This document shows, piece after piece, positions 12,361-61,824 of a stretch of 64,000 bases of DNA; positions within the stretch are counted from its first letter, which is position 1, and each line of letters begins with the position of its first letter. Both the position numbers and the translations under genes were made by a program. Source of the stretch: Octopus sinensis (Eukaryota); contig NC_043021.1 of the NCBI RefSeq assembly GCF_006345805.1, positions 6,386,001 through 6,450,000 on the forward strand, written 5' to 3'. The notes below the pieces were generated by a model. That model saw only the letters and a program-made list of their open reading frames with translations. It searched no databases and was not told where the DNA came from.

Positions 12361-13912
12361 TAAGGTAGCACCAATAATCATGAAATATATAAAACACACC
12401 ATGAATAAATGGCAGACAGTGCTACAGCCCCAGACAAAAGTGGGCCTTATAAAATCAAAGCCATCCCCACTAGAAGAGGAATATTCCAGGGAAACATGCT
12501 CTCTCCACTCCTTTTCTGCTTGGCACTGACACCTTTATCTGAGATGCTAAACAAAACTGGATGCGGATACAGCTGTTATGGCAAAACAATCAACCATCTC
12601 TTGTATATGGATGATCTAAAACTGTATGCTGTAAATGACAAACAGCTGGAAACACTGCTGCAGACAGTGTATGGAGTTACCAAAGAAATAAACATGAAAT
12701 TTAGTTTAGAAAAATGTGCCACAGTAACCTTGAAAAGAGGAAAACTAGTTAAGAGTAACAATATCACACTAGATAAAGCCAATGAAATAAGAGAATTAGA
12801 CCTAAGCCAGACATACAAATACTTAGGAATCAATGAACTAGATATGATACAACACACACAAGAGTTAGATTAATACTGAAAACAGAGCTCAATGCTAAAA
12901 ACAAGATAATAGGTATCAACACTAGCCATCCCAGTTATAAGATACAGCTACAATATTCTTAACTGAACTCTAAATGAACTAATCAAAATAGAAAGGAAAC
13001 AAGAACACTAATGACAGAATTTAGTACACACCATCCAAAATCTGACATAGAAAGGTTATACAATGTATTGAAAGTGGTAGAGGCCTTATACAGCTAGAAA
13101 ACTATTATAAATAACCACCATAGGATTATACAAATATCTAATTCAGAAGCAAGGAAAACTAATACAAGTAGCCACAAAGCTTTAGTAAAACAAAAACTGT
13201 TTTCTGTCTTTAACCCTTTAGTGTTCGCATTATTCTGCCAAAATTAATCCTTTTTTATCCACATTGCTTTGAACTAATCATGCATTGTCTTGTAGCTATG
13301 AGATTTTGATGAGGTAGCTGTTAATTTTTAAAACGATATTGTAGGATTGGTGTGAAAGACCAGATCTGGCCAGTTTGAACATAAAACAGGCAGAATACTT
13401 CTGGCCGGATATGGCCAGTTTAAATGCTAAAGGGTTAAGGAAGCTGAAAAATACAAGAAAGAAGTCATAATACCTAACAACTATGAAGAAAATGAAGAAA
13501 CAACAAAAGCTGTACAACAACTGAAATCCCTGCTAAAACTAGAGCAACAATGTATCATGATAAAACAATGGCAAGAAAAGTCCCTACATAGAAAATATTG
13601 GGTTAAGCTAAACAGAACAAAAAAAAAAAAAATAGACAAAGTTCCAACAATGGTTAAGAAGCTCAGGACTCAAAAAAAGAGAAACTGAAGGATTTTTAAT
13701 TGCAGCACAAGGTCAAAGCCTGCCCACTGTGAAATCACCAAAAACACATAATGAAAATAAAATAAAGAAAATACAACAAATAACTGCAGAATAGGTGATG
13801 ATGGAGAAGAAACAATAAATAATATTGTCTCTGGCTACCCAGTCCTGGCTACGAAGGAACATATTCACAGACACGACAGAGTTGGGACCTATATACACTG
13901 GAAGCTATGCCA
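12356..13912 (+). pseudogene. R4/Dong-clade reverse transcriptase and downstream domains, decayed
   Basis: ORF 12409-12873 has RGIFQGNMLSPLLFCLALTPLS, NHLLYMDDLKLY and YKYLGI. A zinc-knuckle-like region (CR...ETI..IVSGYPVLA...HRHDRVG.YIHWKLC) lies near 13780-13910. It starts at an (AAT)n tract and is interrupted by a MITE. Confidence 0.88.
13210..13438. mobile_element. piggyBac-type MITE nested in the Dong-like LINE
   Basis: TTAA-CCCTTTAG ... CTAAAGGG-TTAA. Confidence 0.85.
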
Positions 13913-15689: not shown

Positions 15690-17265
15690 TCTTCACTAAG
15701 CTAACTTGATTTTAGGCAAAAAAAATTCACGCTTAGGTACAACCATTTCGGTTTTAACAATAGAGATTTATGGGGAGATCCCATAAACCAAATAATTCTA
15801 ACCTATCAGTACCAAACAGATTGGTTGCATTTTTGATGATGTAGACTTTCACCTTGCATGTTTTCCCTAAAAATGTGACATTAGTCCACATTTCACCTAT
15901 AAAATGTTTGTTGCCTGTCATGCTATGAACAAATTTCACTGTTTTTCTCAACAGAGGCTTCCCTATTTTCTTCCATGTGTCCATATTTATTATTGAAATA
16001 TCACTTCCGGTAACCAATTGAAGTGTAATATGTATTCCATTTATTTTTACATGTACAAATTTTCTTATTTTCCTTTTTGCTTCTGCTGAGAGCACCCTAG
16101 GATTTTTAACGTTTGACCTTCATAATTTTGTTCTGCAGTGTGAACTCTTGTGACCAAGTCTTTTGCAACTTTAACATTTTTGATTTTTAACCCTTTAGCG
16201 TTCAAATTAATATGTCAAAAGTAATCCGTATTCATTTACATTTTAAAATATTAATCTGGTATTATCTTGTAACTTCAAGATTTGAAAAATGTAATTGTTT
16301 ATTTTTAGAATGACATTGCAGGGTAGGTGTGAGATACTGGTTCTGGCCAGTTTGAGCATAAAATGAGTAGAATATTCGGGCCGGATACAGCCAGTTTAAA
16401 CACTAAAGGGTTAAATGGACAGTCTTTTCTGAAATGTATGCCTCCACATCCATAACATGGATTAGGATGTGACGCTCTTTTTTGGTTGTACTTTTCCGGC
16501 TGGCATATCTGTATTTTTGAGGAATCCTTTTCTTGAATTTTTTCTACATTGTGTTTCAAGTTTACCATCCTTTTGCATTCTTCTGCCATGGACCGTAAGG
16601 CTAGATCTTGGTTCGCTTTTTCCAATTTAGAATGAATTCTGGCACGGATTTCTGTATCTTCGCTTGCTGTAAGGCCTTCTACGAAAATGAGACACTTGCA
16701 CATCTCAGGTGCAAGTTCTTTGAGTTTAAAACTTTCACAGATCTGGATCACTGTTCCTGTGCATGTGATAAAATCAGCATTCTCTTTTTTTACATTATAT
16801 TCCAACACTCCATTCAAGTGTTAAATAGAGAAGTTTTATCACCGAATATGTTAGACAGTAATTCTGTTGTTTCTTTAAAACAAATTTCATTGGGTTTTTT
16901 TGGAGGGGAAATATGAAATTACAGTAATGTTTATGCTCTAACGGAGCTAATATTTGCAATAACAATTTCACTTTTTGTTCGTCTGGCTATGATTTTCAGT
17001 CTTGCTTTGAAAATTTCCTCATACCTTCTGTAGTACGATGCAAAAGTTATACCCTCCTCTGGGTTATAACTGAATTCATTAATCGAGTTCAAAATGTATT
17101 ATGGAAACTGTACTATGGAAGCTAATAGGCCTTCCATTATTTAACAAGTTGTATCACAAACAAAATTGTTAAATAACCAGCATGAGCTTTGAAACCCTCG
17201 TTGCCAGATGTTGTAATAATCCGTCTGGCAATGGTTTACATTTTCTTTTTTTCCTCTTTGCCAGA
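15690..17265 (-). pseudogene. Ty3/Gypsy LTR retrotransposon gag and protease, decayed
   Basis: ORF 16305-16817 carries the CCHC knuckle CYGCGGIHFRKDCPF. ORF 15754-16095 is retropepsin-like (LQL[V]TGSDISII, catalytic D lost). PBS-like TGGCAACGAG lies on the minus strand near 17188-17206. Confidence 0.85.
16187..16414. mobile_element. piggyBac-type MITE nested in the Gypsy gag region
   Basis: TTAA-CCCTTTAG ... CTAAAGGG-TTAA; same family as 13210. Confidence 0.85.
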
Positions 17266-21918: not shown

Positions 21919-22749
21919 AGTTTCCTCAGTATAAATCTGTTGAAGCCGTATAAATTCGCAACCAGCATGCGATTGGTTATTGACTGATGGTGCAAAAAAA
22001 CAAAAAAACAAAAAAAAACAAAAAAAAACAAAAAAAAAAGACAGGAGTGGCTGTGTGGTAAGTAGCTTGTTTACCAACCACATGATTCCGGGTTCAGTCC
22101 CACTGCGTGGCACCTTGGGCAAGTGTCTTCTACTATAGCCTCGGGCCGACCAAAGCCTTGTGAGTGGATTTGTTAGACGGAAACTGAAAGAAGCCCATCG
22201 TATATATATATACATATATATGCTTGTGTGTGTCTGTGTTTGTCCCCCTAGCATTGCTTGACAACCGATGCTGGTGTGTTTACGTCCCGTTACTTAGCGG
22301 TTCGGCAAAAGAGACCGATAGAATAAGTACTGGGCTTACAAAAGAATAAGTTCCGGGGTCGAGTTGCTCGATTAAAGGCGGTGCTCCAGCATGGCCGCAG
22401 TCAAATTACTGAAACAAGTAAAAGAGTAACCCAAAATGACCTGTCCACCAACCATTCCGCTTTCTGTCCCTCCACCTGTCCTGTTTCACCCCTTCTCTCT
22501 CCCTCTTTCTACCTTTCTCTTCCCTCCACCTCATTTCCACCATTCCTTCTGGCCACCACCCCTCTCATCCCAACTCTTCTCCCCTTAATTCCTACCGATT
22601 CCCTCATACTCTCTCTCTCTCTCTCTCTCTCCTCTCCCCTCTCCCATTGTTTCATATAAAGTTACAACTGCCTCATCACGTTCAGTCTCTTCCAGCATCT
22701 TTCATTTTTTTCATCTGCCCCACTTCTCTCCCCAATTCAGTGACCCATT

Positions 22750-23270
22750 ACAACCATGACCACCACGACGATGACCACCACCATGACCACGACGACGATG
22801 GTGGCGGTGGTGGCCACCAACACCACCACCACCAACACCAACACAACCACCACCACTACTACCACCACCATCCCCATCACCGCCACACCACCACCACCAA
22901 CACCAACTCACCACCACCACCACCACCAACATCACCACCACATGCCACCACCACTTACCACCACCACCAACCAAACTGGCGCCGACACCACTACAACCAC
23001 GACCACCACCACGACCACGCACCACACCACCACCACCCCTGCCGCCGCCGCCGCCACCACTACCACCACCACCACCACTGCCGTCGCACCACCACACCAC
23101 CACCACCACTGCGCCGACGCCGCCACCCTACCACCACCACCCTGCGTCGCCACCACCACAACCACCACCACCACCACCACCCACCACCACCAATACCACA
23201 CCGCCGCGACCACCACCGCCACCATGACCACCACCGCCACCACTGCCGCCGCCACCACCACCACTGCAGA
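22750..23270. repeat. Cryptic (CAC/CAN)n triplet tract
   Basis: Direct reading. A related CAC/CA tract lies at 35100-35830. Confidence 0.9.
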
Positions 23271-26121: not shown

Positions 26122-28123
26122 CATATATATATATAAAGTCATGAATAACAGAAATAGTTTTATGGAATTTTATTTAACACTAAGAAAATTCTAGTATCGC
26201 GACAAATTGTTTCGTAACTTAAAAACATGTAAATAACTTAAATTATTATATTTGATAATAAATGAATTACTTACACATATACAGACATAAGCATAAACAT
26301 ATATAAATACAGGGTGGGTGCAAAAGTTGGTATACACGTACAATACTCGTTTATTTTTATCAAAGAAATAAAAAGTTACGATAAAGGTATTATTATAGTT
26401 ATGATAAATGTGGCTGTGTGGTAAGTAGCTTGCTAACCAACCACATGGTTCCGGGTTCAGTTCCACTGTGTGGCACCTTGGGCAAGTGTCTTCTGCTATA
26501 GCCTCGGGGCCGACCAATGCCTTGTGAGTGGATTTGGTAGCCGGAAAACTGAAAGAAGCCCGTAGCTATTATATGTATATATATATCTATATATGTGTGT
26601 GTATGGTTGTGTGCTGTGTTTGTCCCCTAGCATTGCTTGACAAACCGATGCTGGTGGGTTTACGTCCCGTCACTTAGCGGTTCGGCAAAAGAGACTGATA
26701 GAATAAGTACTGGGCTTACAAAAAGAATAAGTCCCGGGGTCGATTGCTCGACTAAAAGGCGGTGCTCCAGCATGGCCGCAGTCAAAATGACTGAAACGAG
26801 TAAAGGAGTAAAGAGTTATGATTAATGACACTGAAAATGAGGTTAACTAATTGAATGTGCTAATAATTTTGATGAATTAAGTTATTATAACATTGATTTG
26901 ATACTTAATGCATACCTACTTTTGCACTCCCCCTTGTATGTGCATATATGTACACTATACAACTGATTAATTCATGCTCTCTCCTCTAGATGTGAGTAGA
27001 TATGTAGCTACCCTACAACAAGAATCTGCTCTACCTACAATGGGTCCAAGGACTGTATGTACTGGGTGCTTTTTTCATGCCACTGGCAGTATTGAGATTA
27101 CCATGCAGCTCACAAATCTACAAGACCTGAGGAGTGTGGAAGTTCATATGTTAGATGGGGGGCTTAAGGTATGAGAGAAGAGAAGGGAGTGAGAGTAGGT
27201 GCTTGCTTCAGAGTCCCTACACATACACCACGCTCACGTGTGCACTTTATATACATCTATATGTACAGGGTGTCCCGTGGTGTCATATGGTAGGAAGTTC
27301 CATCCCAACAACATGGTTCCAGGTTCAGTCCCACTGTGTGGTACTTTAAGCAAGGGTTTTCTACAATAACCTTAGGCCTTGTGAATGAATTTGGCTGATG
27401 GAAATTGAAAGAAGCTAGTTGTATACACACACACACACACACATATACATATACCTGTGTGTGTTTGTCTCCTATCACAGATTGACAACTGGTGTTGGTT
27501 TGTTTACATCCCTGTGTGGTAAAAAGTCATTAAATTGAAATTTTGAACTCAAATGTCCATGGCATTTTGAAGCACTATCTATCTATCTATCTATCTATCT
27601 GTCTGTTTGTCTGTCTGTCTTTCTGTCCGTCTGTCTGTATATCTATCTATCTATCTATCTATGTCTGTCTATCTATATATCTATCTATCTATCTATTTCT
27701 GTCTATCTATCTGTCTGTCTGTTTGTCTGTCTGTCTGCCTATATCTATCTATCTATCTATTTATCTATCTATTTATCAATATGTATACACACACACATGC
27801 ACACACATACACACACACACACACATACACACACACAATGGAATCTGTTATTACACTGATGGATAATGTAATCAACAACTGCTTCCAGTTATTAAAATTA
27901 GTGGGCCTCAAAATCTTTATTTGCTTAATTTTATCAACTGGTTATTATTATCATTGAAATAGCTTTGTCTCTGAGAAACTACAACAAGTTGCTTCCAACG
28001 TATGTGTGCGAGTGCATGTGTGCATATACAGACATATATATACAAACATATATACACATACATCTATGCATATTAGATCATAGTTAACCTAGAGCTGAAC
28101 AATAACAGCAACAACAATAATAA

Positions 28124-29560: not shown

Positions 29561-29964
29561 AGGCGCAGGAGTGGCTGTGTGGTAAGTAGCTTGTTTACCA
29601 ACCATATGGTTCCGGGTTCAGTCCCACTGCGTGGCACCTTGGGCAAGTGTCTTCTACTATAGCCTCAGGCCGACCAAAGCCTTGTGAGTGGATTTAGTAG
29701 ACGGAAACTAAAAGAAGCATGTCGCATATATGTATATATATATATATATGCGTGTGTGTGTTTGTGTGTCTGTGTTTGTCCCCCTAGCATTGCTTGACAA
29801 CCGATGCTGGTGTGTTTATGACCCCGTTACTTAGCGGTTCGGCAAAAGAGACCGATAGAATAAGTACTGGGCTTACAAAAGAATAAGTCCCGGGGTTGAG
29901 TTGCTCGATTAAAGGTGGTGCTCCAGCATGGCCGCAGTCAAATGACTGAAACAAGTAAAAGAGT
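29561..29964 (+). mobile_element. Full-length tRNA-head SINE, family A (probably one of the octopus OK/OR SINEs)
   Basis: A box TGGCTGTGTGG, B box GGTTCAGTCCC, internal (TA)n(TG)n, tail GAAACAAGTAAAAGAG. Other plus-strand copies: 22042-22428, 26408-26817, 47326-47735 and 62476-62852. Confidence 0.88.
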
Positions 29965-31224: not shown

Positions 31225-31793
31225 TGAGAGGATGCTGGAAAGTTCCTGGCTTTAAAGGTGGCATCACAACATCACAAGCGGAAAGTGTAACCTCTCGAAA
31301 GAGCTGTTCTTCACTCCTGCTCCAGAGCATCGGCTGCGGGGCCACTCCGAAAAGCTCTATCTGCGACGATTTCATCTCAATCGAAGGAGAGGGGCTTTCT
31401 CCGTCCGGACTGCGGATCCGTGGAATAAGCTGCCGGACGAGATAGTGAAGATGCCGAGGACCGCTCGGTTCAAAGTCTCTCTTGACCAGAAATGGCCTGA
31501 ACTCTTTGCATGAACACCCTCCCTGTACATAACTCCATGTCCCCCTACATGACCTTGCTTTTTGCTTTTTGAGCCAAAAAAATTTAACTTAACTTAACTT
31601 AACTTAAGGGTATTGCGAAAGGCCTGGTTGGAGGCCAAGCCTTCCGAGTTCTTTTACAGGGCTTAGAAAAACTGAAGGACCACTGCAATAAGTGTGTGAA
31701 TCTGAGAGGGGAATATGTTGACCAAAATCACAATTAACAGAATCCTCCTGTATTTTATTTTACTCAAAGCCAGGAATTTTCAGCATCCCCTTG
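31225..31793 (+). mobile_element. Mariner-derived MITE (TA-flanked TIRs) interrupted by the CR1 insertion
   Basis: TIRs GAGAGGATGCTGGAAAGTTCCTGGCTTT / AAAGCCAGGAATTTTCAGCATCCCCTTG. The internal part encodes a mariner C-terminus (GLEKLKDHCNKCVNLRGEYV). Confidence 0.85.
31256..31607 (+). mobile_element. 5'-truncated CR1-group LINE 3' end with (AACTT)n tail
   Basis: Translates SGKCNLSKELFFTPAPEHRLRGHSEKLYLRRFHLNRRRGAFSVRTADPWNKLPDEIVKMPRTARFKVSLDQKWPELFA* (stop 31511-31513). This matches the CR1 RGHxxKL...FSxR...WNxLP...FKxxLD tail. Confidence 0.85.
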
Positions 31794-32418: not shown

Positions 32419-33492
32419 ACACACACACACAGACACACACACACACAAAGGGTTTCTTTCGGCCCAAGGCTGTAGTAGAAGAAAACTGACCCATGGTGCC
32501 ACACAGTGAGACTGAACTCGGAACCATGTGGTTGGGAAGCAAGCTTCTTACTACACAGCATAAATAACCAGACTTGAAAAAAAAATGCTCTGCAGTTGAT
32601 TTATTCAACTAAACCCCTTCATGATGGTGCTCCAGCATGGCCACAGACTAGTGACTAAATCAAGTAAAGGATAAAAGATATGTGTATTTGTGAGTGTGCA
32701 TGTGTATATGTATACATATGTGTGCGTGTGTATACTCTTTTACTCTTTTACTTGTTTCAGTCATTTGACTGTGGCCATGCTGGAGCACCGCCTTTAGTTG
32801 AGCAAATCGACCCCGGGACTTATTCTTTGTAAGCCCAGTACTTATTCTATCGATCTGTTTTGCCGAACCGCTAAGTGACGGGGACGTAAACACACCAGCA
32901 TCGGTTGTCAAGCAATGCTAGGGGGACAAACACAGACACACAAACATATACACACATATATATATATATACATATATACGACAGGCTTCTTTCAGTTTCC
33001 ATCTACCAATTCCACTCATAAGGCATTGGTCGGCCCGGGGCTATAGCAGAAGACACTTGCCCAAGATGCTACGCAGTGGGATTGAACCCGGAACCATGTG
33101 GCTGGTTAGCTGCTACTTACCACACAGCAACTCCTGTATGTATATATATATATATATGTATATGGAGAAGGCGCATGGCTTAGTGGTTAGGGGTATTCAT
33201 CTCACAGTCATAAGGTTGTGAGTTCAATACCCAGCAACACACCATGTCCTTGAGCAAGACACTTTATTTCGCATTGCTCCAGTCCACTCAGCTGGCAAAA
33301 ATGAGTAGTGCCTGTATTTCAAAGGGCTAGCCTTGTCACACTCTGTGTCACACTGAATCTCTCCAAGAACTACATTAAGGGTACACATGTCCAAGGAGTG
33401 CTCAGCCACTTGCACATTAATTTCTCAAGCAGTCTGTTTCATTGATCGGATCAAATGGAAACCTTGTCATCGTAACCCACAGAGTGGCAGTT

Positions 33493-33545
<53 letters not shown>

Positions 33546-33925
33546 ATATATAATAAAATATTAGGGAATAAATCCAAACTTACAGGGAAAAATCAGATTT
33601 AGGATTGAATCCAATTTTATAGTAAAATATTATATTATATTAAATTAGAGATAAAACCACTATTAGGCAAATCAAACAATGAAAAACTTAAGCCAATACA
33701 TAAAATTAATTAATTTATATTATTTTAAATATATATCAAAAGTATTAAAAGTTTAATAAAAGATAATGAGTAAAACACTACGATCATATATATATATACA
33801 TGAGTCAGTTGATGGCCTCCACTACCTCAAATGTTCTTAAAATTTAAATCCACATCTTTGTCTATATATCTACCTTCTCTATAATGTTGCCACTTGATAT
33901 GAAAATTTTTGTATTAATGGAAATC

Positions 33926-34029
33926 CTCTATAATTGGCTGATGAGTGCTCAGCATTTTAAAACTGTTGTAATACTTACAACATTTAATTAAATGATGTAG
34001 TACGAAACGATCGTACCAAATTACCGGAG
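33926..34029 (+). ncRNA. Type I hammerhead ribozyme, copy 1
   Basis: Helix I TAATTGG/CCAAATTA (one bulged A) plus distal CTCT/GGAG. Core CTGATGA 33938-33944. Helix II GTGCT/AGTAC extended by CATTT/AAATG and TGTTGTAA/TTACAACA. GAAA 34004-34007. Palindromic helix III ACGATCGT. Predicted GUA cleavage after 34015. Confidence 0.9.
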
Positions 34030-34120
34030 TCATTCTTGTTGCTTATTTTGAGTATATATATATATATGTAGATATACGCAGTCACGTATATGTGCATATG
34101 AGTGTGTGTGTGTGTAAAAC

Positions 34121-34226
34121 CTCTATAATTGGCTGATGAGTGCTCAGCATTTTAAAACTGTTGTAATACTTACAACATTTAATTAAATGATGTATAGTAC
34201 AAAACGATCGTACCAAATTACCGGAG
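34121..34226 (+). ncRNA. Type I hammerhead ribozyme, copy 2, with G12A core mutation (probably inactive)
   Basis: Same fold as copy 1, but GAAA reads AAAA at 34201-34204. Confidence 0.85.
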
Positions 34227-34315
34227 TCGTTCTTGTTGCTTATTTTGAGTATATATATATATGTAGATATACGCAGTCACGTATATGTGCATATGAGTGT
34301 GTGTGTGTGTAAAAC

Positions 34316-34421
34316 CTCTATAATTGGCTGATGAGTGCTCAGCATTTTAAAACTGTTGTAATACTTACAACATTTAATTAAATGATGTATAGTACGAAAC
34401 GATCGTACCAAATTACCGGAG
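34316..34421 (+). ncRNA. Type I hammerhead ribozyme, copy 3
   Basis: CTGATGA 34328-34334, GAAA 34396-34399, ACGATCGT helix III, predicted GUA cleavage after 34407. Confidence 0.9.
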
Positions 34422-34516
34422 TCGTTCTTGTTGCTTATTTTGAGTATATATATATATGTAGATATACGCAGTCACGTATATGTGCATATGAGTGTGTGTG
34501 TGTGTGTGTGTAAAAC

Positions 34517-34622
34517 CTCTATAATTGGCTGATGAGTGCTCAGCATTTTAAAACTGTTGTAAAACTTACAACATTTAATTAAATGATGTATAGTACGAAA
34601 CGATCGTACCAAATTACCGGAG
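34517..34622 (+). ncRNA. Type I hammerhead ribozyme, copy 4
   Basis: CTGATGA 34529-34535, GAAA 34597-34600, predicted GUA cleavage after 34608. The helix II apical loop reads AAC instead of TAC. Confidence 0.9.
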
Positions 34623-35337
34623 TCATTCTTGTTGCTTATTTTGAGTATATATATATATATGTAGATATACGCAGTCACGTATATGTGCATATGATTGAGT
34701 GTGTGTGTGTGTGTATGTGTGTACTGCACAACACCTATTTAACAATAGCATGGTGTGTAGGTGACAATTGTAAACTGAGGCGTACAGTAACAACCATCAC
34801 CTGTTATCAGAAGCAGGTGTCATATCGTAATTGAAAATGAATGAAATTAAAAAGAAAATAGGAAAAAAAAAAAATCAATCAGTTTTTGTAACTACCATCT
34901 ACTCTGCTTGTCACGACGACCACCACCACCACCACTACTACTGGTACTACATTCACCAAACTAATATCTTCTCTTAGTATGTACACTACCTGTCACAACC
35001 TTCATACCATGTTGCCCACACTACAACTTCAGCTACCACTACAACCAACATCATACCTTCACCTGGATGTCGTGCACACATCACCACTATACACTACCGC
35101 ACACACACACATAATCACTACATATATATGACACCACATGCATGCACAATCACCACTACTATCGCCACCACCATCACCGTCCACACACACATGTACACAC
35201 TATCACCATCACACACATACACCATCACCACCACTGTAACCATCACCATACATACACACACATACAAAATCACCACCATACACACACATGCGCTTACCAT
35301 TACCACAACACACATACACAATCACCATCACCACCAC

Positions 35338-35368
<31 letters not shown>

Positions 35369-38247
35369 CATCGCCACCAGTAAACACCACCACCACACAC
35401 ATACACACACACACACACACACAATCACCACCATACACACACACACACCATCGCCACCAGTAAACACCACCACCACACACACACATACACACAATCACCA
35501 CCATACACACACATGCGCTTACTATTACCACAACACACACACACACACACCACCACCACACACACACACACCACACCACCATCGCCGCCAGTAAACACCA
35601 CCACCACACACATACACACACACACACACACATGCAATCACCACCATACACACACATGCGCTTGCCATTACCACAACACACATACACAACCACCATCACC
35701 ACCAACATACACACACACAGACACACACCCACAGACACACACCCACACACACACACACACACACACACCACCACCACCACCACCATTGCCGCCAGTAAAC
35801 ACCACCGCCGCCACACACATGCTCGCATACACACTTACCATCTGATGTCAATAAATAACTCGACACAGCTCACAAAGGTGTGGAACAAAACACCAATTTA
35901 CAAAGCTAGCCTTAAGATTCAAATCAATAACCAATTGGTGTAATGTTCAGATCAATAGTACGATAGTGAGGTGACATAGTGTGGTGCATATTCATTATTG
36001 ATTATTAATTATTGAGCTCCATATAGAAACTGATAAATATCTCATATTGATCTCATAAATATATTGTTATCAACTCACCTTTGATATTTTATTATTATTA
36101 TTATTATTATTATATTATTATATTATTATTATTATTATTATCCAGTAATCTTGTTTTTATTGCATGTTTTCACTGCACAACCAGGTGCAACAGCTCTGTG
36201 CACCTTGGTTATGTGTAGTGTTTTGCTTCAGGTTTGTATTTTCTACTGTATTGACAATACTTTACGAAATGTGTGAGGACCTAGTAAAGCTAGTTTCCGT
36301 AGTTTGCATGTATCACCACCTTCACTTAATATCCATTTTACCATGCTTTGCATGCGCCAGATGGAATTTGTTAAGGCAGATTTCCAATGGCTGGATGCTC
36401 TTCCTGCCATCAACACTTGTGTGTTTCCAATCGAGGTAATATTTTCACATGGTTTACACACGGTTTTTTTTTTTATGGAAAACTGGAAAGGAACAATATC
36501 ACTTGTATGACAGTAACGCTCATTTGTAATTATCACATGATGTCACGACAGAGGCACAGACACACACACAGACACACACATACATACATACCTACATATA
36601 TATACAATGGGCTTCTTTCAGTTTTTGTTTATCAAATTCACTCAGGGTTGTCCTATGTGTATATATATGTATGTATATAGAGAAGGAACATGGCTTAGTG
36701 GTTAAGGTATTCAGCTCACAGTCATAAAGTCGTGAGTTCAATACCCAGCAACACACTATGTCTTTGAGCAAGACACTTTATTTCACGTTGCTCCAGTCCA
36801 CTCACCTGGCAAAAATGAGTAGTACCTGTATTTCAAAGGGCCAGCACTGTCACTCTCTGTGACTAAGAATAGTTAGGGTCCATCAATCCATTCATTTTCC
36901 CCACTCTCTATTCCAGGGACAGTCATGGGAGGTAGCATCCTCAAGCACCTCCTCCATGGGGTCTTATTAGAAACAACAGTCATGAGACCCTCCAGTTGGA
37001 TTCTGGATGCATAATCAACTAAAATATTATGGATATTAACCAACAATCTCACTCTTGGTCTCCTGCCAGTCGGATTGCTTTGAAGAATTTGTATTGAGGT
37101 TTTTCCCTCTGATGTTCTAATCCCATGACAATACTACTGGAGCTGTGACCACTGAATACAGAAAAGTATTGAGAAAGGAATTGTTAGGATGCCAGACGAA
37201 AAAAAACCTTATCGTATGTTTTTGTCCTTTTACATTCTGAATTTAAATCTTGTTAAGATTTAATTTGCTTGTCAGGTTTTTTAAAAAGAAAGTTTTTGGC
37301 CGTAAGTCAATAAAATAAGTATCAGTGAACTTGCCAACCTCTCCAGAATATTAGCAGCTATGTCAAGTCAATAATAAAATTCATTATTAACGAGATTTTA
37401 ATACTGTGAACAATTCTCCTCAATTTTATAATGTATATGTAAACAGTAATATATACACTACAGATGAGATGAATATATGTGTATGTGTGATATATATATA
37501 TATATATATAAGCGCCATCCGAATCGTGACCGAAGCCAGTGCCGCCTCGACTGGCTTCCGTGCAGGTGGCACGTAAAATGCACCAATCCAACCATGGCTG
37601 ATGCCAGCCTCGCTTGGCACCAGTGCAGGTGGCACGTAAAAAGCACCCACTACACTCACGGAGTGGTTGGCATTAGGAAGGGCATCCAGCTGTAGAAACA
37701 TTGCCAGATAAGACCGGAGCCTGGTGCAGCCTTCTGGCTTCCCAGATCCCCGGTCGAACCGTCCAACCCATGCTAGCGTGGAGAACGGATGTTAAACGAT
37801 AATGATGATGATATATATATATATATTTCTTTACTACCCACAAGGGGTTAAACACAGAGGGGACAAACAAGGACAGACAAACGGATTAAGTCGATTACAT
37901 CGACCCCAGTGCGTAACTGGTACATAATTTATCGACCCCAAAAGGATGGAAGGCAAAGTCGACCTCGGTGAAATTTGAACTCAGAACGTAACGGCAAACG
38001 AAATACTGCTAAGCATTTCGCCCGGTGTGCTAACATTTCTGCCAGCTCGCCGCCTTTATATATATATATAGGAGTGGCTGTGTGGTAAGTAGCTTGCCTA
38101 CCAACCACATGGTTCTGGGTTCAGTCCCACTGCGTGGAATCTTGGGCAAGTGTCTTCTGCTATAGCCCCGGGCTGACCAATGCCTTGTGAGTGGAATTGG
38201 TAGACGGAAACTGAAAGAAGCCTGTCGTATATATGTATATATATATA

Positions 38248-39423: not shown

Positions 39424-39901
39424 AGACCTGGTAGAAACAGCAGCCAAATCTCCCTCAAATCACACCTTACTGTCTTATGTATGTATATATATATGAGCCA
39501 ATGAGGGGGACCTCTACATGGTAGCTAGACCTGGTAGAAATAGCAGCCAAATTTCCCCCAAATCACACCTTACTGTCTTATCTATGTATATATGTATGTA
39601 TGAGCCTATGAGGGAGACCCCTACATGGCAGCTAGACCTGGTAGAAATAGCAGCCAAATTTCCCCCAAATCACACCTACTTCTTATCTATGTATATATGT
39701 ATGTATGAGCCTATGAGGGAGATCCCTACATGGCAGCTAGACCTGGTAGAAATAGCAGCCAAATTTCCCCCAAATCACACCTTACTGTCTTATCTATGTA
39801 TATATGTATGTATGAGCCTATGAGGGAGACCCCTACATGGCAGCTAGACATGGTAGAAATAGCAGCCAAATCTCCCTCAAATCACACCTTACTGTCTTAT
39901 C
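39424..39901 (+). repeat. ~105-bp tandem array, 4.5 copies
   Basis: AGACCTGGTAGAAA starts at 39424, 39527, 39634, 39739 and 39846. Confidence 0.92.
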
Positions 39902-40073
39902 TTTCTGCTACTTGGATATAGGTGTTATATTCGTCGTAAAAAAACTTTCCTGTCACACACTCACGCACACGCACACACACACACACACACACGCACCCTC
40001 ACACACACACACACGCGCACACCCACACACACCCACTCACACACACGCACGTTAGCTTACAATTTTATTTATA

Positions 40074-41100: not shown

Positions 41101-41391
41101 TTATATGTTTCAGCCTTGAGGTTGTGGCCATGCTGGATCATGTGTGTGTGTGTGTGTGTGTGTGTGTCTATCTGTCTGTCTGTCTGTATGTATATATGTA
41201 TATGTATGGTGGTGAACAATAATATTTTCAACAGATGTGTTGCAAATGTATCTGATTGTTCTCAAGCTTCAATACTGTGGTGTGTGTATGGTGTGTGGTG
41301 TATGTATGTATGTATGTATATGTATGTATGTATGTAATGTATGTATGTATGTATGTGTGTATGTATGTATGTGTGTGTATGTATGTGTGTA

Positions 41392-41426
<35 letters not shown>

Positions 41427-41594
41427 ATGTATGTATGTTGTATGAGTGTATGTTTACTTTATTACTAATTACTCTCTTCCAAGAACATTTTCACTCACTC
41501 TTAGCTTCCCATACATTTTACTCATGTATCTATCAGCGTCATAGACAGAATACTTTCACTTTAGTCTTCCTCAAATCACTCTGTCGCTATTTAC

Positions 41595-43280: not shown

Positions 43281-43327
43281 CATATATATAATACATATAT
43301 ATATACACACACACACACATTATTTCT

Positions 43328-43810
43328 GGGTCGATAAATTAAGTACCAGTTACGCACTGGGGTCGATGTAATCAACTTAATCCGTTTGTCTGTCCTTGTT
43401 TGTCCTCTCTGTGTTTAGTCCCTTGTGGATAGTAAAGAAACAGGTATTTCATCTACTGTTACGTTCTGAGTTCAAATTCCACCGAGGTCAACTTTACCTT
43501 TCATCCTTTCGGAGTCGATAAATTAAGTACCAGTTACGCACTGGGGATCAATGTCATCAACTTAACCCTGTTGTCTGTCCTTGTTTGACCTCTCTGTGTT
43601 TAGTCCCTTGTGGGTAGTAAAGAAATAGGTATTTCGTCTACTGTTACATTCTGAGTTCAAATTCTACCGAGGTCAACTTTACCTTTCATCCTTTCGGAGT
43701 CGATAAATTAAGTACCAGTTACGCACTGGGGTTGATGTAATCGACTTAACCCCATTGTCTGTCCTTGTTTGTCCCCTCTATGTTTAGCCCCTTGTGGGCA
43801 ATAAAGAAAT
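43328..43810 (+). repeat. Head-to-tail array of head-truncated SINE-B units (period ~184)
   Basis: Units restart at about 43438 and 43622, directly after the previous copy's ...GTAGTAAAGAAA tail. Confidence 0.8.
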
Positions 43811-44304
43811 AAAGGAATTCTTGGATATGAGATGAGGCCAATGGCAACAATGGTCAAAAATATTTCTATCTGATCAGTTTGATTTTTTATTCAGCCACTG
43901 AATATCAAGGACTACATTAGCAAATGTATGTTTTACTTTTGCAAGACTGTAGGTTGTGATTTGAGGAAGTGCTGTCTCTGTAGTTCTTCTTTTGAAAAAA
44001 AAAGAAACATGAAAAAATTATTTAATGATAAAATCTTTAAGAGATTAATATGATTATTAAGAGCGTATGAAAGGTCATTAAATAACAAGTGTAACTTACA
44101 GCTATTGTGCTAATTCCAATGTGGGCGCGTGGAATTTTCAATATTTGTGCGAATGCGTTCCTTAATGATTTCAGAAGTGTGTAGTTACGATTCAATGCTG
44201 GGTAGTTAACGTGCTGGAAATAGATTCAAAAGAGAAAATAAATATATACATCAGCAGGGACACAGTTCAATGGCTGAAATCAGAAAACAGTAAAAGAACA
44301 TCTT

Positions 44305-46227: not shown

Positions 46228-47034
46228 TATGTATGTATATATATATATGCATGTTTTATTTATTAATTTGTTATTATATGACGGAACGCATGCATCCATT
46301 CCTCAGTAAGTTTTATATATATATATATATATATTATATACACACACAGACTTTATTTTTGAATATTCTTAAATTACCATAAATTGCTTCTAGCAATAAT
46401 TTCCTAATTAGCCTTGTCTTTTCTGGCTTTATGAAGTCCACTTTTACAACATTGGTGTTGAGACAGTCAGTTACACAATCAAGTGCTTCAATAATTATAG
46501 GAATAAATATGATTCTTGAAATAAATCTTAAGTGAAAGTCCAAGTGGAGTTCAGTATATATTTTTTATATCTTTTCACTAATCTTCAATATTAGGTTGAC
46601 ATCCAGTGGGGAATTAATTGCTGCAAATGCACGCAATTTTCTTCCTCATTTCTGATCATTATATGTATATATATTCTTTTATTCTTTTACTTCCTTCAGT
46701 CATATGTAGAGGGACTTATTCTTTTGTAAGCCCAGTACTTATTCTATCGGTCTCTTTTGCCGAACCGCTAAGTAACGGGGACATAAACACACCAGCATCG
46801 GTTGTCAAGCAATGCTAGGGGGACAAACACAGACACACACAAACACACAAATATATATATATACATATATACTACAGGCTTCTTGTAGTTTCCGTCTGCC
46901 AAATCCACTCACATGGCTTTGGTCGGCCTGAGACTATAGTAGAAGACACTTGCCCAAGGTGCCACGCAGTGGGACTGAACCCGGAACCATGTGGTTGGTA
47001 AACAAGCTACTTACCACACAGCCACTCCTGCACC

Positions 47035-47067: not shown

Positions 47068-47293
47068 GATGGGCTTCTTTTAGTTTCCTTCCACCAAATC
47101 CACTCTTAAGGCTTTGGTTGACCAGGGGCTATAACAGAGGCATTTGCCCAAGGTGCTACATATTTGGATAGATTCTGAGACAATTTGGTTGAGAAGTCTG
47201 CCAACCAATCAATCAATCTCTCTCTCTCTCTTTCTTTCTCCCTCTACATATAAGCACACACACATACACAAATACACACACACACACACATAC

Positions 47294-47326
<33 letters not shown>

Positions 47327-48133
47327 GGCACAGGAGTGGCTATGTGGTAAGTAGCTTGTTTACCAACCACATGGTTCCGGGTTCAGTCCCACTGCGTGGC
47401 ACCTTGGGCAAGTGTCTTCTACTATAGCCTCGGGCTGACCAAAGCCTTGTGAGTGGATTTGGTAGACGGAAACTGAAAGAAGCCCGTCGTATATATGTAT
47501 ATATATATATGTGTGTGTATGTTTGTGTGTCTGTGTTTGTCTCCCTAGCATTGCTTGACAACCGATGCTGGTGTGTTTATGTCCCCGTTACATAGCGGTT
47601 CGGCAAAGAGACCAATAGAATAAGTACTGGGCTTACAAAAAGAATAAGTCCCGGGGTCGAGTTGCTCGATTAAAGGCGGTGCTCCAGCATGGCCGCAGTC
47701 AAATGACTGAAACAAGTAAAGGAGTAAAAGAGTAAAGAGAATATATACATACACACACACACACATTCATATATATATATATATATATATATATGTTCAT
47801 AAAACAACTCAATTAGCAACAGAGAGAGAGAGGTTAAGTAATAATAACAATAATGATAATAATAATAATAATAATTTGAAGAAGAAGAAAAAACAACAAC
47901 AATGACGACAGCATAAAGGAAAGCAGTTCTTCAAAGAAACGCAAGAAGTGAGAGAGATTGGTTCAAAAGCCGTCAAGACAGACACAGAAGTGAGAGAAAG
48001 GAGAAACCACCTCAACACACAGACAACATTATTCATTGACAATGATGAGTTGATGTCTCTGTTGCTAGTCTGTTGTGTTAGGAAAGCACAAACAACATAA
48101 TAGCAATCAGCTGACGTCTATATGTATATATGC

Positions 48134-50849: not shown

Positions 50850-51391
50850 GTGCAGAGGGAGGGAAAGAGTGGAAGAGTTAAGTGGTTAAAACGAGGAGGG
50901 GGAGGAGGCGGAGGAGGAGGAGGAGGGAAACATGCAAGCGTGGTAACGAAAGGGTTAACCAGCCCCTTCTTACATTGCAGGCTTTCTTTCAGTTCCAATG
51001 TAGTTGGAATTGGTGGGGATAATGTTGGGGTCGGGGTGAGGTGGTGGTAGTGGTGGTGTTAGTTGGGGGGGGTCTGCCTCCTCTTTTTCTGTCTCTTCCT
51101 CTTCCTTCCTCTCCCTCCTTATATGTTATTGTTGTGTTGTTGTTGTTTACCCAGAGGTCAATCCTGAAATCCTGCAAACCTATTATCAAAGGCATTCCGG
51201 TCATAAACCCATCCCATAGATTATTTAGACACAGTGTATCCAGGACTAAATTGCCCAATGTGCCCTTCCTTGTTTATGACAGTCATGTGAGATTACATGT
51301 GCATGTGTGTGCGTAATTGCGGATTCTTTTGATCATGTGATCAAAGGAATCCTTAATTGAAAAAACAAGTTGGGGCTAATGCCTCACAGAA

Positions 51392-51825
51392 TACTCTTTT
51401 TACTCTTTTACTTGTTTCAGTCATTTGACTGCAGCCATGCTGGAGCACCGCCTTTAATCGAGCAACTCGACCCCAGGACTTATTCTTTTGTAAGCCCAGT
51501 ACTTATTCTATTGGTCTCTTTTTGCCGAACTGCTAAGTAACGGGGAAATAAACACACCAGCATCGATTGTCAAGCAATGCTAGGGGGACAAACACAGACA
51601 CACAAACACACACACGCATATATATATATATTACATATATATATATATATATACATATATACGATGGGCTTCTTTCAGTTTCCATCTACCAAATCCACTC
51701 ACAAGGCTTTGGTCGGCCCGAGGCTATAGTAGAAGACACTTGCCCAAGGTGCCACGCAGTGGGACTGAACCCGGAACCATGTGGTTGGTAAACAAGCTAC
51801 TTACCACACACCCACTCCTGCACCT
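51392..51825 (-). mobile_element. Full-length SINE family A, minus strand
   Basis: Reverse complement of the 29561 copy. Other minus-strand copies: 20800-21181, 32733-33136 and 46683-47035, plus many half copies. Confidence 0.88.
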
Positions 51826-51967
51826 ATGTTGAATTTATTTAACGTTCCTTTACACAATTGCGATTTCTATCCTCTGATATTATATTTCAGAAAAGTAGAG
51901 AGCTAATAAGAAACATGAGTACTTTGTGTGTAGGTGTGTACGCACACACACACACACACAGACACAC

Positions 51968-58268: not shown

Positions 58269-58828
58269 GTAGGTATTGTATACACACACACATTTATATA
58301 TACAGACACAATGTCGGTGGGCGGATGAATGAATAGATATATAGATAGTGTGATTGATTGATTGATAGATAGATAATGCACTTCATGTTTACGTATTTCT
58401 TGTTTCAAGGATATAAACAAGCAGGCGGATTAGTTGTGAGGCAAGTGCGTGGTGAGCATTAAATTTCTTTGATGTCGTTGATGTCATGTTCAGCTTAAAC
58501 CTAAAACATTGAATGGCTTCTCACCAACTCCAAGAATTAAACAGCCAGGTTCAGAGTGTTTTGGTGAGAATAAGTAACAAATAAGTAGTTGGTCCTTTCA
58601 ACAAATACCATTCCCCCCCACCCCTTTTATTCAGGAGTGAAGGGCAATTCTCTTGCTCCTTCACAGGGCCTCAAAATCCTTGTATGGAGAAAGGGAAGAA
58701 AGTGTCCTCGAACTGAAGATCTGGCTCAAATGTTTGCACCAGAGTGAACTATTGTTACCCAAGGTGCCAGGTAGTGGTGTTAAACCAAGCAGTGGGTTAA
58801 ATCTACCACCCATATAAGCCATATATAT

Positions 58829-58871
<43 letters not shown>

Positions 58872-58912: not shown

Positions 58913-59005
58913 CCTTTACTCTCGACATATGTTTCGAAGACAACATGGTTTCATTCCAAAGGAATAAAGGGTGTAAGATGCAATCTTCTCATCAGGAAAG
59001 AAAGG
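58913..59005 (-). ncRNA. Type I hammerhead ribozyme with canonical GUC site
   Basis: Minus strand: CCTTTCTTTC-CTGATGA-GAAGA...TCTTC-GAAA-CATATG-TC-GAGAGTAAAGG. Helix I is 10 bp with one bulge, helix II is extended, helix III is the palindrome ACATATGT. Cleavage is predicted between 58924 and 58923. Confidence 0.9.
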
Positions 59006-60777: not shown

Positions 60778-61824
60778 TTCCACTAGCATGAGTGCCAATC
60801 AGGCGGTACTGTCATCGGCTACATCAGCGATTTTAGTTTGTTTACACTTTCCTCAACAGGTCTTCACAAGCAAAGTTCATTGTCCAATGAATGAGAGGTA
60901 CTCATAAGTGGCCCCGGTTACACCCCACTCTTGGATGTGCTTTTAATATTCCACTGGCACAAGTGCCAATCAGGCGGTACTGTCATCGGCTACATCAGCG
61001 ATTTTGTTTTGTTTTTACACACTTCCTCAACAGGTCTTCACAAGCAAAGTTCATTGTCCAGTGAAGAGAGGTACTCATAAGTGGCCCCGGTTACAAACAC
61101 ACCCCACTTCTTGCTTTTAATCACTGGCACAAGTGCCAATCAGTCTCGTCATCGGCTACATCAGCGATTTTGGTTTGTTTACACTTTCCTCAACAGTCTT
61201 CACAAGCAAAGTTCATTGTCCAGTGAATGAGAGGTACTCATAAGTGGCCCCGTTACACCCCACTCTTGGATGTGCTTTTAATATTACACTGGCACAAGTG
61301 CCAATCGCGGTACTGTCATCGGCTACATCAGCGATTTTGGTTTGTTTAAACTTTCTCAACAGGTCTTCACAAGCAAAGTTCATGTCCAATGACTGAGAGG
61401 TACTCATAAGTGGCCCCGGTTACACCACATCTTGGATGTGCTTTTAATATTCCACTGGCACAAGTGCCAATCAGGCGGTACTGTCATCGGCTACATCAGC
61501 GATTTTGGTTTGTTTACACTTTCCTCAACAGGTCTTCACAAGCAAAGTTCATTGTCCAATGAATGAGAGGTACTCATAAGTGGCCCCGGTTACACCCCAC
61601 TCTTGGATGTGCTTTTAATATTCCACTGGCACAAGTGCCAATCAGGCGGTACTGTCATCGGCTACATCAGCGATTTTGGTTTGTTTACACTTTCCTCAAC
61701 AGGTCTTCACAAGCAAAGTTCATTGTCCAATGAATGAGAGGTACTCATAAGTGGCCCCGGTTACACCCCACTCTTGGATGTGCTTTTAATATTCCACTAG
61801 CACAAGTGCCAATCAGGCGGTACT
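60778..61824 (-). repeat. 171-bp tandem array (six copies plus a partial) built from RTE 3' UTR sequence
   Basis: Units start at 60778, 60949, ~61119, ~61284, 61450, 61621 and 61792. The minus strand contains TGCTTGTGAAGACCTGTTGAG, as at about 52438. Confidence 0.92.

What the first reader, a model, noticed from the sequence alone, without database searches (positions are those of the whole stretch)
33925..34714. Tandem array of four hammerhead ribozymes: candidate octopus retrozyme or circular-RNA generator
Seen in sequence: four head-to-tail 195-201 bp units, each folding into a full type I hammerhead (CUGAUGA core, GAAA, GUA site, helices I-III). The repeated unit begins almost exactly at the 5' base of helix I (CCTCT). 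Predicted cuts after 34015, 34212, 34407 and 34608 would release 197, 195 and 201 nt monomers. Established knowledge: non-LTR retrozymes of metazoans and newt satellite 2 are tandem repeats of a few hundred bp with one type I HHR per unit, processed into monomeric and circular RNAs and thought to be mobilised by PLE reverse transcriptases. Inference: this locus is such an element, or a tandemly amplified PLE pseudo-LTR. The unit also includes ~65 bp of microsatellite-like linker, so local DNA-level duplication is a real alternative.
Basis: partly seen in the sequence, partly recalled or inferred. Interest (0 to 1): 0.92.

Follow-up and report, generated by a model that had tools for sequence, protein, structure and literature searches.

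The report
Hammerhead ribozyme tandem repeat in octopus
A four-copy, roughly 197-bp tandem repeat in an octopus genome carries a self-cleaving hammerhead ribozyme motif in each copy (three intact, one with a dead catalytic core), so it looks like a new cephalopod example of the known animal "retrozyme" repeats, but its activity and mobility are untested.

Summary
The array is real: 33921-34714, four head-to-tail units of 197, 195, 201 and 201 bp, 95-99% alike. Units 1, 3 and 4 each hold a complete type I hammerhead, with cleavage predicted after 34015, 34407 and 34608. Unit 2 is not intact: catalytic G12 is A at 34201. Rfam scores the motif at only 18.6-19.4 bits against a threshold of 34, because helix II carries a 47-nt insertion. 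My own structural descriptor expects 0.004 hits per window by chance. It found the array and a second, sequence-unrelated solo hammerhead at 58913-59005 (-). Helix III is 2 bp plus a palindromic tetraloop, the hallmark of hammerheads that act as dimers in tandem transcripts. SINE matches place the window in Octopus, a genus with Penelope-like elements. The locus meets the structural definition of a metazoan non-LTR retrozyme. Untestable here: other genomic copies, transcription, cleavage and circular RNA. No target-site duplication was found, and no reverse transcriptase or endonuclease lies within about 4 kb. The exact four-copy count also fits local DNA duplication. Verdict: a new member of a known kind, of moderate interest.

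The parts
33921..34117 (+). Unit 1 (197 bp). Hammerhead domain 33925-34031: CUGAUGA 33938-33944, GAAA 34004-34007, predicted cleavage after A34015. It has a 2-nt (TA) deletion in distal helix II relative to the other units.
   Evidence: Rfam Hammerhead_1 18.6 bits
34118..34312 (+). Unit 2 (195 bp). Hammerhead-like domain 34120-34228 with CUGAUGA 34133-34139. Catalytic G12 is A at 34201 (AAAA 34201-34204). The cleavage-site sequence after A34212 is intact.
   Evidence: It is found only when the descriptor is relaxed to [AG]AAA. No Rfam Hammerhead_1 hit.
34313..34513 (+). Unit 3 (201 bp). Complete hammerhead 34315-34423: CUGAUGA 34328-34334, GAAA 34396-34399, predicted cleavage after A34407.
   Evidence: (Rfam 19.4 bits, full 45-position model with a 47-nt insert in helix II)
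34514..34714 (+). Unit 4 (201 bp). Complete hammerhead 34516-34624: CUGAUGA 34529-34535, GAAA 34597-34600, predicted cleavage after A34608. It has a T-to-A change in the apical loop of helix II and an altered (TG)n tail that ends the array.
34424..34513 (+). Example of the inter-ribozyme linker: about 21 nt of T-rich spacer, (TA)n, a 34-nt unique segment, (TG)n, then AAAA. It folds as a (UA)n/(UG)n hairpin, which produces spurious sub-threshold microRNA-model hits.
58913..59005 (-). Second, solo type I hammerhead candidate, unrelated in sequence to the array. Helix I is CCUUU-CUUUC / GAGAG-U-AAAGG. CUGAUGA is at 58995-58989. Helix II is GAAGAU.../...GUCUUC within a 53-nt domain. GAAA is at 58935-58932. 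Helix III is ACAUAUGU (palindrome). Predicted cleavage is after C58924. A (TA)n(GTAT)n tract follows 55 nt downstream (58868-58821).
   Evidence: not detected by Rfam at E<=10

Best explanation
This locus is a small array of a non-coding, hammerhead-bearing tandem repeat in an Octopus genome. Structurally it is a metazoan non-LTR retrozyme-type element with three intact ribozymes and one dead one.

Shown here:
- There are four head-to-tail units of about 197 bp.
- Each unit has a type I hammerhead scaffold: helix I of 7 bp, an internal loop and 4 more bp; the CUGAUGA core; a 61-nt helix II domain closed by G10.1-C11.1; GAAA; and helix III of A-U and C-G capped by the palindromic tetraloop GAUC. 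The cleavage triplet is GUA.
- Unit 2 has lost G12.

Inferred mechanism:
- Read-through transcription gives multimeric RNA.
- Helix III is unstable as a hairpin, but ACGAUCGU is self-complementary. Neighbouring units would therefore pair into double hammerheads with an 8-bp helix III and cleave after GUA.
- A host RtcB-type tRNA ligase would circularise them.
- The reverse transcriptase of a Penelope-like element might copy the circles into new tandem insertions.
- In a double hammerhead each core cuts the partner's site. Unit 2's site could then still be cut by a neighbour's intact core, while unit 2's own core would be inert.
For: - The array is real.
- The complete core and all three helices are present in units 1, 3 and 4. 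Helices I and II are recovered by unconstrained MFE folding, and the ribozyme-constrained fold lies only 4 kcal/mol above the MFE.
- Chance expectation is 0.0043 hits per window, yet two independent loci are present.
- The two loci share architecture but show no significant sequence similarity outside the core (83 of 500 shuffles score as well). Both have a long helix II domain, G10.1-C11.1, C15.2-G16.2 and a palindromic loop 3. The helices are therefore maintained with different sequences.
- The helix III hairpin scores 0.0 kcal/mol against -10.0 for the intermolecular duplex. This matches the published description of metazoan type I hammerheads that act as dimers in tandem repeats (PMC4209133, PMC7229834).
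- Unit length, GC of 31-33%, the lack of coding capacity or Pfam domains and the single ribozyme polarity fit the non-LTR retrozyme definition (PMC7229834).
- Units 3 and 4 satisfy the operational criterion of at least two consecutive complete hammerheads with MFE below -5 kcal/mol (bioRxiv 10.64898/2026.07.22.740005).
- The host is Octopus, which carries Penelope-like elements (PMC13282606, PMC8967140).
- None of the other 100-200-bp tandem arrays in the window carries a ribozyme-like motif.
Against: - Rfam Hammerhead_1 scores only 18.6-19.4 bits, below the gathering score of 34.
- One of three substitutions inside the ribozyme domains hits the catalytic core (G12A, unit 2), so there is no sign of selection for activity since the units duplicated.
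- No second copy of the unit was found anywhere I could look: the window, 61 kb of O. vulgaris sample, metagenome, prokaryote and viral contig scans, or pseudo-ORF protein look-ups.
- There is no target-site duplication of 6 nt or more and no partial units at the edges.
- The array is exactly 4.0 units. Its ends lie at the 5' edge of helix I and in the unit's own (TG)n, not at the ribozyme cleavage site.
- The circular monomer fold is no more stable than shuffles (z -0.5 to -1.4).
- Helix II is far longer than in canonical animal hammerheads, so the usual loop 1-loop 2 contact cannot be assumed.
Confidence: 0.6

Rival explanations
1. The array is a local DNA-level minisatellite. A single hammerhead-bearing fragment, either a solo retrozyme monomer or a decayed piece of a Penelope-like element, sat next to a microsatellite. 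It was then amplified in place by unequal crossing-over or replication slippage. The ribozyme is a passenger, and no RNA-mediated step made the array.
For: - The copy number is exactly integral (4.0), with both ends in phase with the unit.
- The inter-unit junction GTGTA|AAA(A)CCTCT can be read as the 3' end of the array joined to its 5' start.
- There is no target-site duplication.
- Units 2 and 3 are 99.5% identical and share two states against units 1 and 4. This A-B-B-A pattern shows at least one in-place duplication or conversion.
- The same window holds other 107-185-bp tandem arrays, some with SINE-like consensus units, so such arrays form readily here.
- The second hammerhead is a solo copy with the same layout of ribozyme, spacer, then (TA)n.
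Against: - Tandem organisation with one type I hammerhead per unit is exactly what defines retrozymes.
- The palindromic helix III only makes sense for ribozymes that work in tandem (PMC4209133).
- Of the tandem arrays in the window, only this one has a ribozyme.
- This rival explains how the copy number arose, not why a hammerhead is there, so it overlaps with the main explanation.
Confidence: 0.28
2. The array is the remnant of tandemly inserted Penelope-like elements. The repeated unit would be a pseudo-LTR whose internal reverse transcriptase/endonuclease ORF has been deleted.
For: - Penelope-like elements carry type I hammerheads in their pseudo-LTRs and insert as partial tandems (PMC4209133, PMC8557442).
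- Vertebrate retrozymes are phylogenetically close to such pseudo-LTRs (bioRxiv 10.64898/2026.07.22.740005).
- Octopus genomes hold Penelope families (PMC13282606).
- Both hammerheads in the window are followed by (TA)n within 60 nt. Only 6.9% of window positions have this property, and (TA)n is a reported preferred target of some of these elements (PMC8557442).
Against: - No RVT_1 or GIY-YIG signal appears in the stop-free segments of 50 aa or more that were submitted from 29.8-37.8 kb or 58.6-62.3 kb.
- The only reverse transcriptase fragment is 21 kb away, at 12409-12873.
- The motif has a 2-bp helix III with a tetraloop and no extra base between positions 9 and 10.1. It is therefore closer to canonical animal hammerheads than to the minimal variants of metazoan Penelope-like elements (PMC4209133).
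Confidence: 0.07
3. The resemblance is chance. An AT-rich minisatellite happens to contain CUGAUGA and GAAA with pairable flanks.
For: - Rfam scores are below threshold.
- My lenient descriptor would still give on the order of 100-200 chance hits in a roughly 2.8-Gb genome at 0.034 per Mb per strand.
- The energies are not better than shuffles.
Against: - Helices I and II are much longer than the descriptor demands.
- G10.1-C11.1, C15.2-G16.2 and a palindromic loop 3 are all present, although none was required by the search.
- The motif sits in a tandem array of retrozyme-like unit length.
- A second independent motif with the same unrequired features lies in the same 64 kb.
Confidence: 0.04

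Closest known systems
Metazoan non-LTR retrozymes (Cervera & de la Pena 2020, PMC7229834), e.g. the Mytilus galloprovincialis 350-390-bp and Acropora millepora 220-240-bp repeats
   Same: Short, AT-rich, non-coding head-to-tail repeats. One type I hammerhead per unit, of a single polarity. No LTR, PBS or PPT. The host genome also carries Penelope-like elements.
   Different: Only four units, one with a dead core. The helix II domain is 61 nt instead of about 4 bp plus a loop. About 65 nt of each unit is (TA)n/(TG)n microsatellite. Copy number elsewhere, expression and circular RNA are unknown. No cephalopod example turned up in the literature I could search.
Newt and salamander satellite 2 / axolotl HHR_Amex2 retrozymes
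   Same: [quoted passage not shown] HHR_Amex2 has the same arrangement of two base pairs plus a tetraloop (PMC7229834).
   Different: The amphibian units are 330-350 bp, present in about 10^5 copies, with a canonical short helix II and conserved loop 1-loop 2 contacts.
Hammerheads in pseudo-LTRs of Penelope-like elements (PMC4209133)
   Same: Type I topology, palindromic positions around helix III, tandem context, and an enlarged helix II relative to canonical motifs.
   Different: No reverse transcriptase/GIY-YIG ORF lies nearby. A real 2-bp helix III with a loop is present. There is no bulged base after A9. Helix I is long rather than 4-5 bp.
Schistosoma Sm-alpha hammerhead repeats (from my own knowledge; also cited in PMC4209133)
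   Same: A short non-coding repeat with an active type I hammerhead, found both dispersed and in tandem.
   Different: It is a SINE-like retroposon of about 335 bp with a canonical compact ribozyme. There is no sequence similarity to the octopus unit.

Membership tests
Hammerhead ribozyme, type I (Rfam RF00163 / clan CL00010) | Score at or above Rfam's curated gathering threshold (34 bits) | tested here: not met
   There were 0 gathering-score hits in the window. Units 3, 4 and 1 score 19.4, 19.4 and 18.6 bits, and unit 2 gives no hit. The alignment covers all 45 model positions, and the shortfall comes from a 47-nt insertion in the helix II loop.
Hammerhead ribozyme, type I (Rfam RF00163 / clan CL00010) | Conserved core C3-U4-G5-A6-N7-G8-A9, G12-A13-A14, A15.1-U16.1 and H17 | tested here: met
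   Met in units 1, 3 and 4 and in the solo motif at 58913-59005 (-). Not met in unit 2, which has G12A at 34201.
Hammerhead ribozyme, type I (Rfam RF00163 / clan CL00010) | Three helices around the core, with helix I open and helices II and III closed | tested here: met
   Helix I is UAAUUGG/CC(A)AAUUA plus CCUC/GGAG. Helix II is GUGCU/AGUAC plus an extension. Helix III is AC/GU with loop GAUC.
Hammerhead ribozyme, type I (Rfam RF00163 / clan CL00010) | Loop 1-loop 2 tertiary contact of canonical animal motifs (helix I about 6 bp, helix II about 4 bp) | tested here: inconclusive
   Both stems have internal loops 5-7 bp from the core, but helix II continues for about 50 nt. The conserved loop nucleotides cannot be assigned.
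Hammerhead ribozyme, type I (Rfam RF00163 / clan CL00010) | Site-specific self-cleavage | not testable with these tools
   This needs in vitro transcription of monomer and dimer templates.
Metazoan non-LTR retrozyme | Head-to-tail tandem repeats of about 150-450 bp with one type I hammerhead per unit | tested here: met
   There are 4.0 units of 195-201 bp, with a hammerhead scaffold in every unit, intact in three.
Metazoan non-LTR retrozyme | [quoted passage not shown] 2026) | tested here: met
   Units 3 and 4 are each complete, with MFE -21.5 kcal/mol. [quoted passage not shown]
Metazoan non-LTR retrozyme | Non-coding, no LTRs, GC below 50% | tested here: met
   The longest stop-free stretch is 88 aa and has no Pfam match. 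The flanks are not repeats of each other or of the unit. GC is 31-33%. PBS and PPT were not searched for specifically.
Metazoan non-LTR retrozyme | Many copies at unrelated loci, flanked by target-site duplications when present | not testable with these tools
   No octopus genome can be searched by DNA here. There is no other copy in the window, in 61 kb of O. vulgaris or in the contig collections. No duplication of 6 nt or more is shared by the sequences flanking this array.
Metazoan non-LTR retrozyme | Expressed as monomeric linear and circular RNAs | not testable with these tools
Metazoan non-LTR retrozyme | Highly self-paired circular monomer | tested here: inconclusive
   Circular folds give -38 to -40 kcal/mol with 62-69% of bases paired, but z is only -0.5 to -1.4 against dinucleotide shuffles.
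Metazoan non-LTR retrozyme | Co-existence with autonomous Penelope-like elements in the same genome | not tested
   Supported by literature only: Penelope families are annotated in O. vulgaris and O. bimaculoides (PMC13282606, PMC8967140). None was detected in the parts of the window scanned.
Penelope-like element pseudo-LTR | Direct repeats flanking an ORF with a telomerase-like reverse transcriptase and a GIY-YIG endonuclease | tested here: not met
   There are no Pfam hits in 29.8-37.8 kb, and the units abut each other with no internal ORF.
Penelope-like element pseudo-LTR | Minimal hammerhead variant (no or 1-bp helix III, bulged base between A9 and 10.1, helix I of 4-5 bp) | tested here: not met
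   G10.1 directly follows A9. Helix III is 2 bp plus a tetraloop. Helix I is 7 + 4 bp.

The most novel reading that the evidence does not exclude
Octopus genomes may carry a lineage-specific class of hammerhead elements with two distinguishing features. First, helix II is expanded into a 53-61-nt domain that replaces the canonical loop-loop contact. Second, the mobile RNA itself may include (UA)n/(UG)n tracts. These tracts would anneal to nicked genomic microsatellites and prime reverse transcription by a Penelope-like enzyme. That would explain why both hammerheads in this window abut (TA)n, and why the array ends inside its own (TG)n rather than at the cleavage site.
Probability: 0.12. Interest if true: 0.6.

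Novelty: new member of a known kind. Interest (0 to 1): 0.35.

Why it matters
- If the family proves multi-copy and expressed, it would extend ribozyme-made circular RNAs (retrozymes) to cephalopods. This is a lineage noted for unusual RNA biology and a repeat-rich genome, and I found no report of hammerheads or retrozymes there.
- The natural G12A unit sits between intact units. That gives a ready-made test of whether these ribozymes cut their own site or their neighbour's, as the double-hammerhead model predicts.
- The very long helix II shows that curated Rfam thresholds miss this variant. Genome surveys that rely on them would under-count animal hammerheads.
- If the array turns out to be unique to this locus, it is simply a minisatellite that captured a dead ribozyme.

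Tried and rejected
- **Rfam at curated thresholds.** Nothing in the whole window. In E-value mode the linker gave only sub-threshold microRNA, scaRNA and snoRNA hits, caused by (TA)n/(TG)n hairpins, and I dismissed them.
- **Other copies by DNA.** Two metagenome scans, one prokaryote-genome scan and one viral-contig scan all returned zero. These collections are not expected to hold octopus DNA, so the result is uninformative.
- **Other copies through pseudo-ORFs of the unit.** Two exact look-ups and one homology search found nothing. The window's own ORFs are not in that collection either, so this is also uninformative.
- **Literature search by sequence strings.** No hits.
- **Supplements.** The retrozyme paper's supplement does not mention cephalopods. 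The O. vulgaris repeat paper's supplement is a short document that does not appear to include the repeat library.
- **Sampling O. vulgaris.** Three 20-kb slices held no hammerhead.
- **Homology between the array unit and the solo hammerhead.** Not significant.
- **Degenerate partial units or duplications at the array edges.** None.
- **Reverse transcriptase or endonuclease domains near either hammerhead.** None.
- **Thermodynamic stability as evidence.** Rejected, because the z-scores are near zero.
- **A third, compact hammerhead-like site at 6356-6402 (+).** It appears only with a relaxed descriptor and scores 13.5 bits (E = 1.7), so I treat it as probably chance.
Full report
**1. The observation**

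Tandem Repeats Finder reports one array at 33921-34708: period 195, 4.0 copies, 95% matches, score 1427.
- I divided it into units 33921-34117, 34118-34312, 34313-34513 and 34514-34714. They align with 95% mean column identity.
- Unit 3 is 99.5% identical to unit 2, 97.0% to unit 4 and 97.4% to unit 1.
- Homology begins 4 nt before CCTCT and ends in the last unit's (TG)n.
- The flanks hold no degenerate partial units. Local alignments of 300 nt on each side against a unit dimer score within the shuffle range.

**2. The ribozyme**

Each unit reads 5'-CCUCUAUAAUUGG-CUGAUGA-[61-nt helix II domain]-GAAA-C-GAUC-G-UA|CCAAAUUACCGGAG.
- The core, G10.1-C11.1, C15.2-G16.2, A15.1-U16.1 and the GUA triplet are all in place in units 1, 3 and 4.
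- Unit 2 has A instead of G12 at 34201. G12 is a catalytic residue, so that core should be dead. Established hammerhead biochemistry says this change reduces activity by orders of magnitude (my own knowledge).
- Unconstrained folding recovers helices I and II. A fold constrained to the ribozyme structure lies 4 kcal/mol above the minimum.
- Rfam finds nothing at gathering thresholds. In E-value mode, Hammerhead_1 matches units 3, 4 and 1 at 19.4, 19.4 and 18.6 bits over the full model, with a 47-nt insertion in the helix II loop. It misses unit 2.

**3. Chance**

I wrote a type I descriptor with these requirements:
- CTGANGA;
- helix II of at least 4 bp with a loop of up to 70 nt;
- GAAA;
- helix III of A-U plus one pair with a 3-12-nt loop;
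- UH;
- helix I of at least 4 bp.

It gave no hit in 300 dinucleotide shuffles of the window. It gave 10 hits in 295 Mb of first-order Markov sequence. That is 0.034 per Mb per strand, or 0.0043 expected per window.

Genome-wide, this still allows on the order of a hundred chance hits, so the descriptor alone is not proof. However, the real motif far exceeds its minimum requirements, it sits in a tandem array, and its loop 3 is palindromic.

**4. A second hammerhead**

The same scan found an independent motif on the minus strand at 58913-59005.
- Helix I is CCUUU-CUUUC / GAGAG-U-AAAGG.
- The core is CUGAUGA.
- Helix II is GAAGAU/GUCUUC within a 53-nt domain.
- GAAA is followed by helix III ACAUAUGU, again a perfect palindrome.
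- The cleavage triplet is GUC.
- It has no significant sequence similarity to the array unit outside the core, and it is a solo copy.

Two unrelated sequences keeping the same architecture works like covariation evidence that both are real hammerheads. Rfam does not see this one at E<=10.

Both motifs are followed within 60 nt by (TA)n of at least 6 repeats. Only 6.9% of window positions have this property. This is suggestive, but n = 2 and the test was post hoc.

A third, compact candidate at 6356-6402 is weak (13.5 bits, E = 1.7).

**5. How the ribozyme would work**

- The helix III hairpin has no predicted stability (0.0 kcal/mol). Two copies of ACGAUCGU form a duplex of -10.0 kcal/mol.
- This is the published signature of most animal type I hammerheads: a 1-2-bp helix III capped by a small palindromic loop. 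Such motifs are poorly active alone and active as dimers when a second copy lies in tandem (PMC4209133). The axolotl HHR_Amex2 motif and invertebrate motifs have the same arrangement of two pairs plus a tetraloop (PMC7229834).
- In a double hammerhead each core acts on the partner's site. Unit 2's site may therefore still be cut while its own core is inert. This is inference.
[quoted passage not shown] None of these steps is shown here.

**6. Context**

- The region is non-coding. The longest stop-free stretch across the array is 88 aa.
- The stop-free segments of 50 aa or more that I submitted from 29.8-37.8 kb gave no Pfam hits. The same holds for 58.6-62.3 kb around the second motif.
- A LINE-type RVT_1 fragment lies at 12409-12873 and a gag-like zinc-knuckle ORF at 16305-16817.
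- Other tandem arrays of 107-185 bp occur in the window. None has a ribozyme-like Rfam signal.
- A SINE-derived ORF (62483-62917) has six significant matches in a 5.8-billion-protein database. The four that carry an organism name are all from Octopus vulgaris or O. bimaculoides.
- The window's SINEs are 88-95% identical to O. vulgaris GCA_951406725.2 loci. The octopus attribution therefore stands.

**7. Retrozyme or local duplication?**

In favour of membership:
- unit length, AT-richness, one single-polarity type I hammerhead per unit, and no coding capacity or LTRs;
- two consecutive complete ribozymes, the operational criterion of bioRxiv 10.64898/2026.07.22.740005;
- Penelope-like elements in Octopus genomes (PMC13282606, PMC8967140).

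Against, or neutral:
- no target-site duplication of 6 nt or more;
- exactly 4.0 units, with ends at the unit boundary rather than at the cleavage site;
- an A-B-B-A pattern of shared variants, which shows at least one in-place duplication or conversion;
- a core-killing mutation in one unit;
- a circular fold no more stable than shuffles;
- no second copy in anything I could search. None of those sources contains an octopus genome searchable by DNA.

I therefore put 0.6 on a retrozyme-type element and 0.28 on a purely local minisatellite built from a solo hammerhead fragment. I put 0.07 on a Penelope-like pseudo-LTR remnant and 0.04 on chance.

**8. Novelty**

Tandem repeats with type I hammerheads are a described class. 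The class paper states that they occur from molluscs to arthropods (PMC7229834).
- I found no paper that links hammerheads or retrozymes to cephalopods. The 2026 O. vulgaris repeat annotation does not mention ribozymes.
- This is a new member of a known kind. Its variant features are a 53-61-nt helix II domain and a microsatellite-bearing unit.
- Interest is moderate, at 0.35.

Noticed in passing
window 58913-59005 (-), with microsatellite 58821-58868: A solo type I hammerhead candidate, unrelated in sequence to the array, with the same architecture: a long helix II domain, palindromic helix III ACAUAUGU and a GUC cleavage site after 58924. It is followed by (TA)n(GTAT)n and is missed by Rfam even at E<=10.
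   Followed up: yes
window 6356-6402 (+): A compact hammerhead-like site (CUGACGA, helix II GACC/GGUU, GAAA, cleavage triplet AUC) next to a SINE-like copy. It was found only with a relaxed descriptor. Rfam Hammerhead_1 scores it at 13.5 bits (E = 1.7), so it is probably chance or a decayed copy.
   Followed up: partly
window 60755-61853; 39424-39902; 43323-43811; 7399-7719: Other tandem arrays of 171 bp x 6.5, 107 bp x 4.5, 185 bp x 2.7 and 165 bp x 1.9. The last two have consensus units that look SINE-derived (my reading; not tested). Rfam in E-value mode found no ribozyme in the first three arrays; 7399-7719 was covered only by the whole-window gathering-threshold search. Minisatellites of 100-200 bp evidently form readily in this region.
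   Followed up: partly
window 22037-22429, 26410-26815, 29567-29964, 32726-33161, 46711-47029, 47290-47743, 51391-51827, 62475-62852: Many copies of a roughly 400-bp SINE, 88-95% identical to copies in Octopus vulgaris GCA_951406725.2. An ORF read through one copy has six significant database matches; the four that carry an organism name are all Octopus.
   Followed up: yes
window 12409-12873 (+); 16305-16817 (-); 31256-31510 (+): Retrotransposon debris. There is an RVT_1 fragment with a YMDD motif (best database relative 67% identical, and 81% DNA identity to a Logan contig of run SRR11869391). There is a gag-like ORF with a CX2CX4HX4C zinc knuckle. A stop-free stretch also resembles the C-terminal tail of LINE ORF2 proteins (from my own knowledge; no Pfam hit).
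   Followed up: partly
window 34444-34514, 34050-34118, 34649-34722, 41298-41435: Sub-threshold matches to microRNA models (mir-297, mir-3149, mir-509) arise wherever (TA)n faces (TG)n. They are hairpins of microsatellite origin, not evidence of microRNA genes.
   Followed up: no
window 35183-35782 and 22814-23264: Long CA/CCA-rich low-complexity tracts with strong negative GC skew lie just downstream of the array and at 22.8 kb. They generate long spurious ORFs rich in His and Thr.
   Followed up: no
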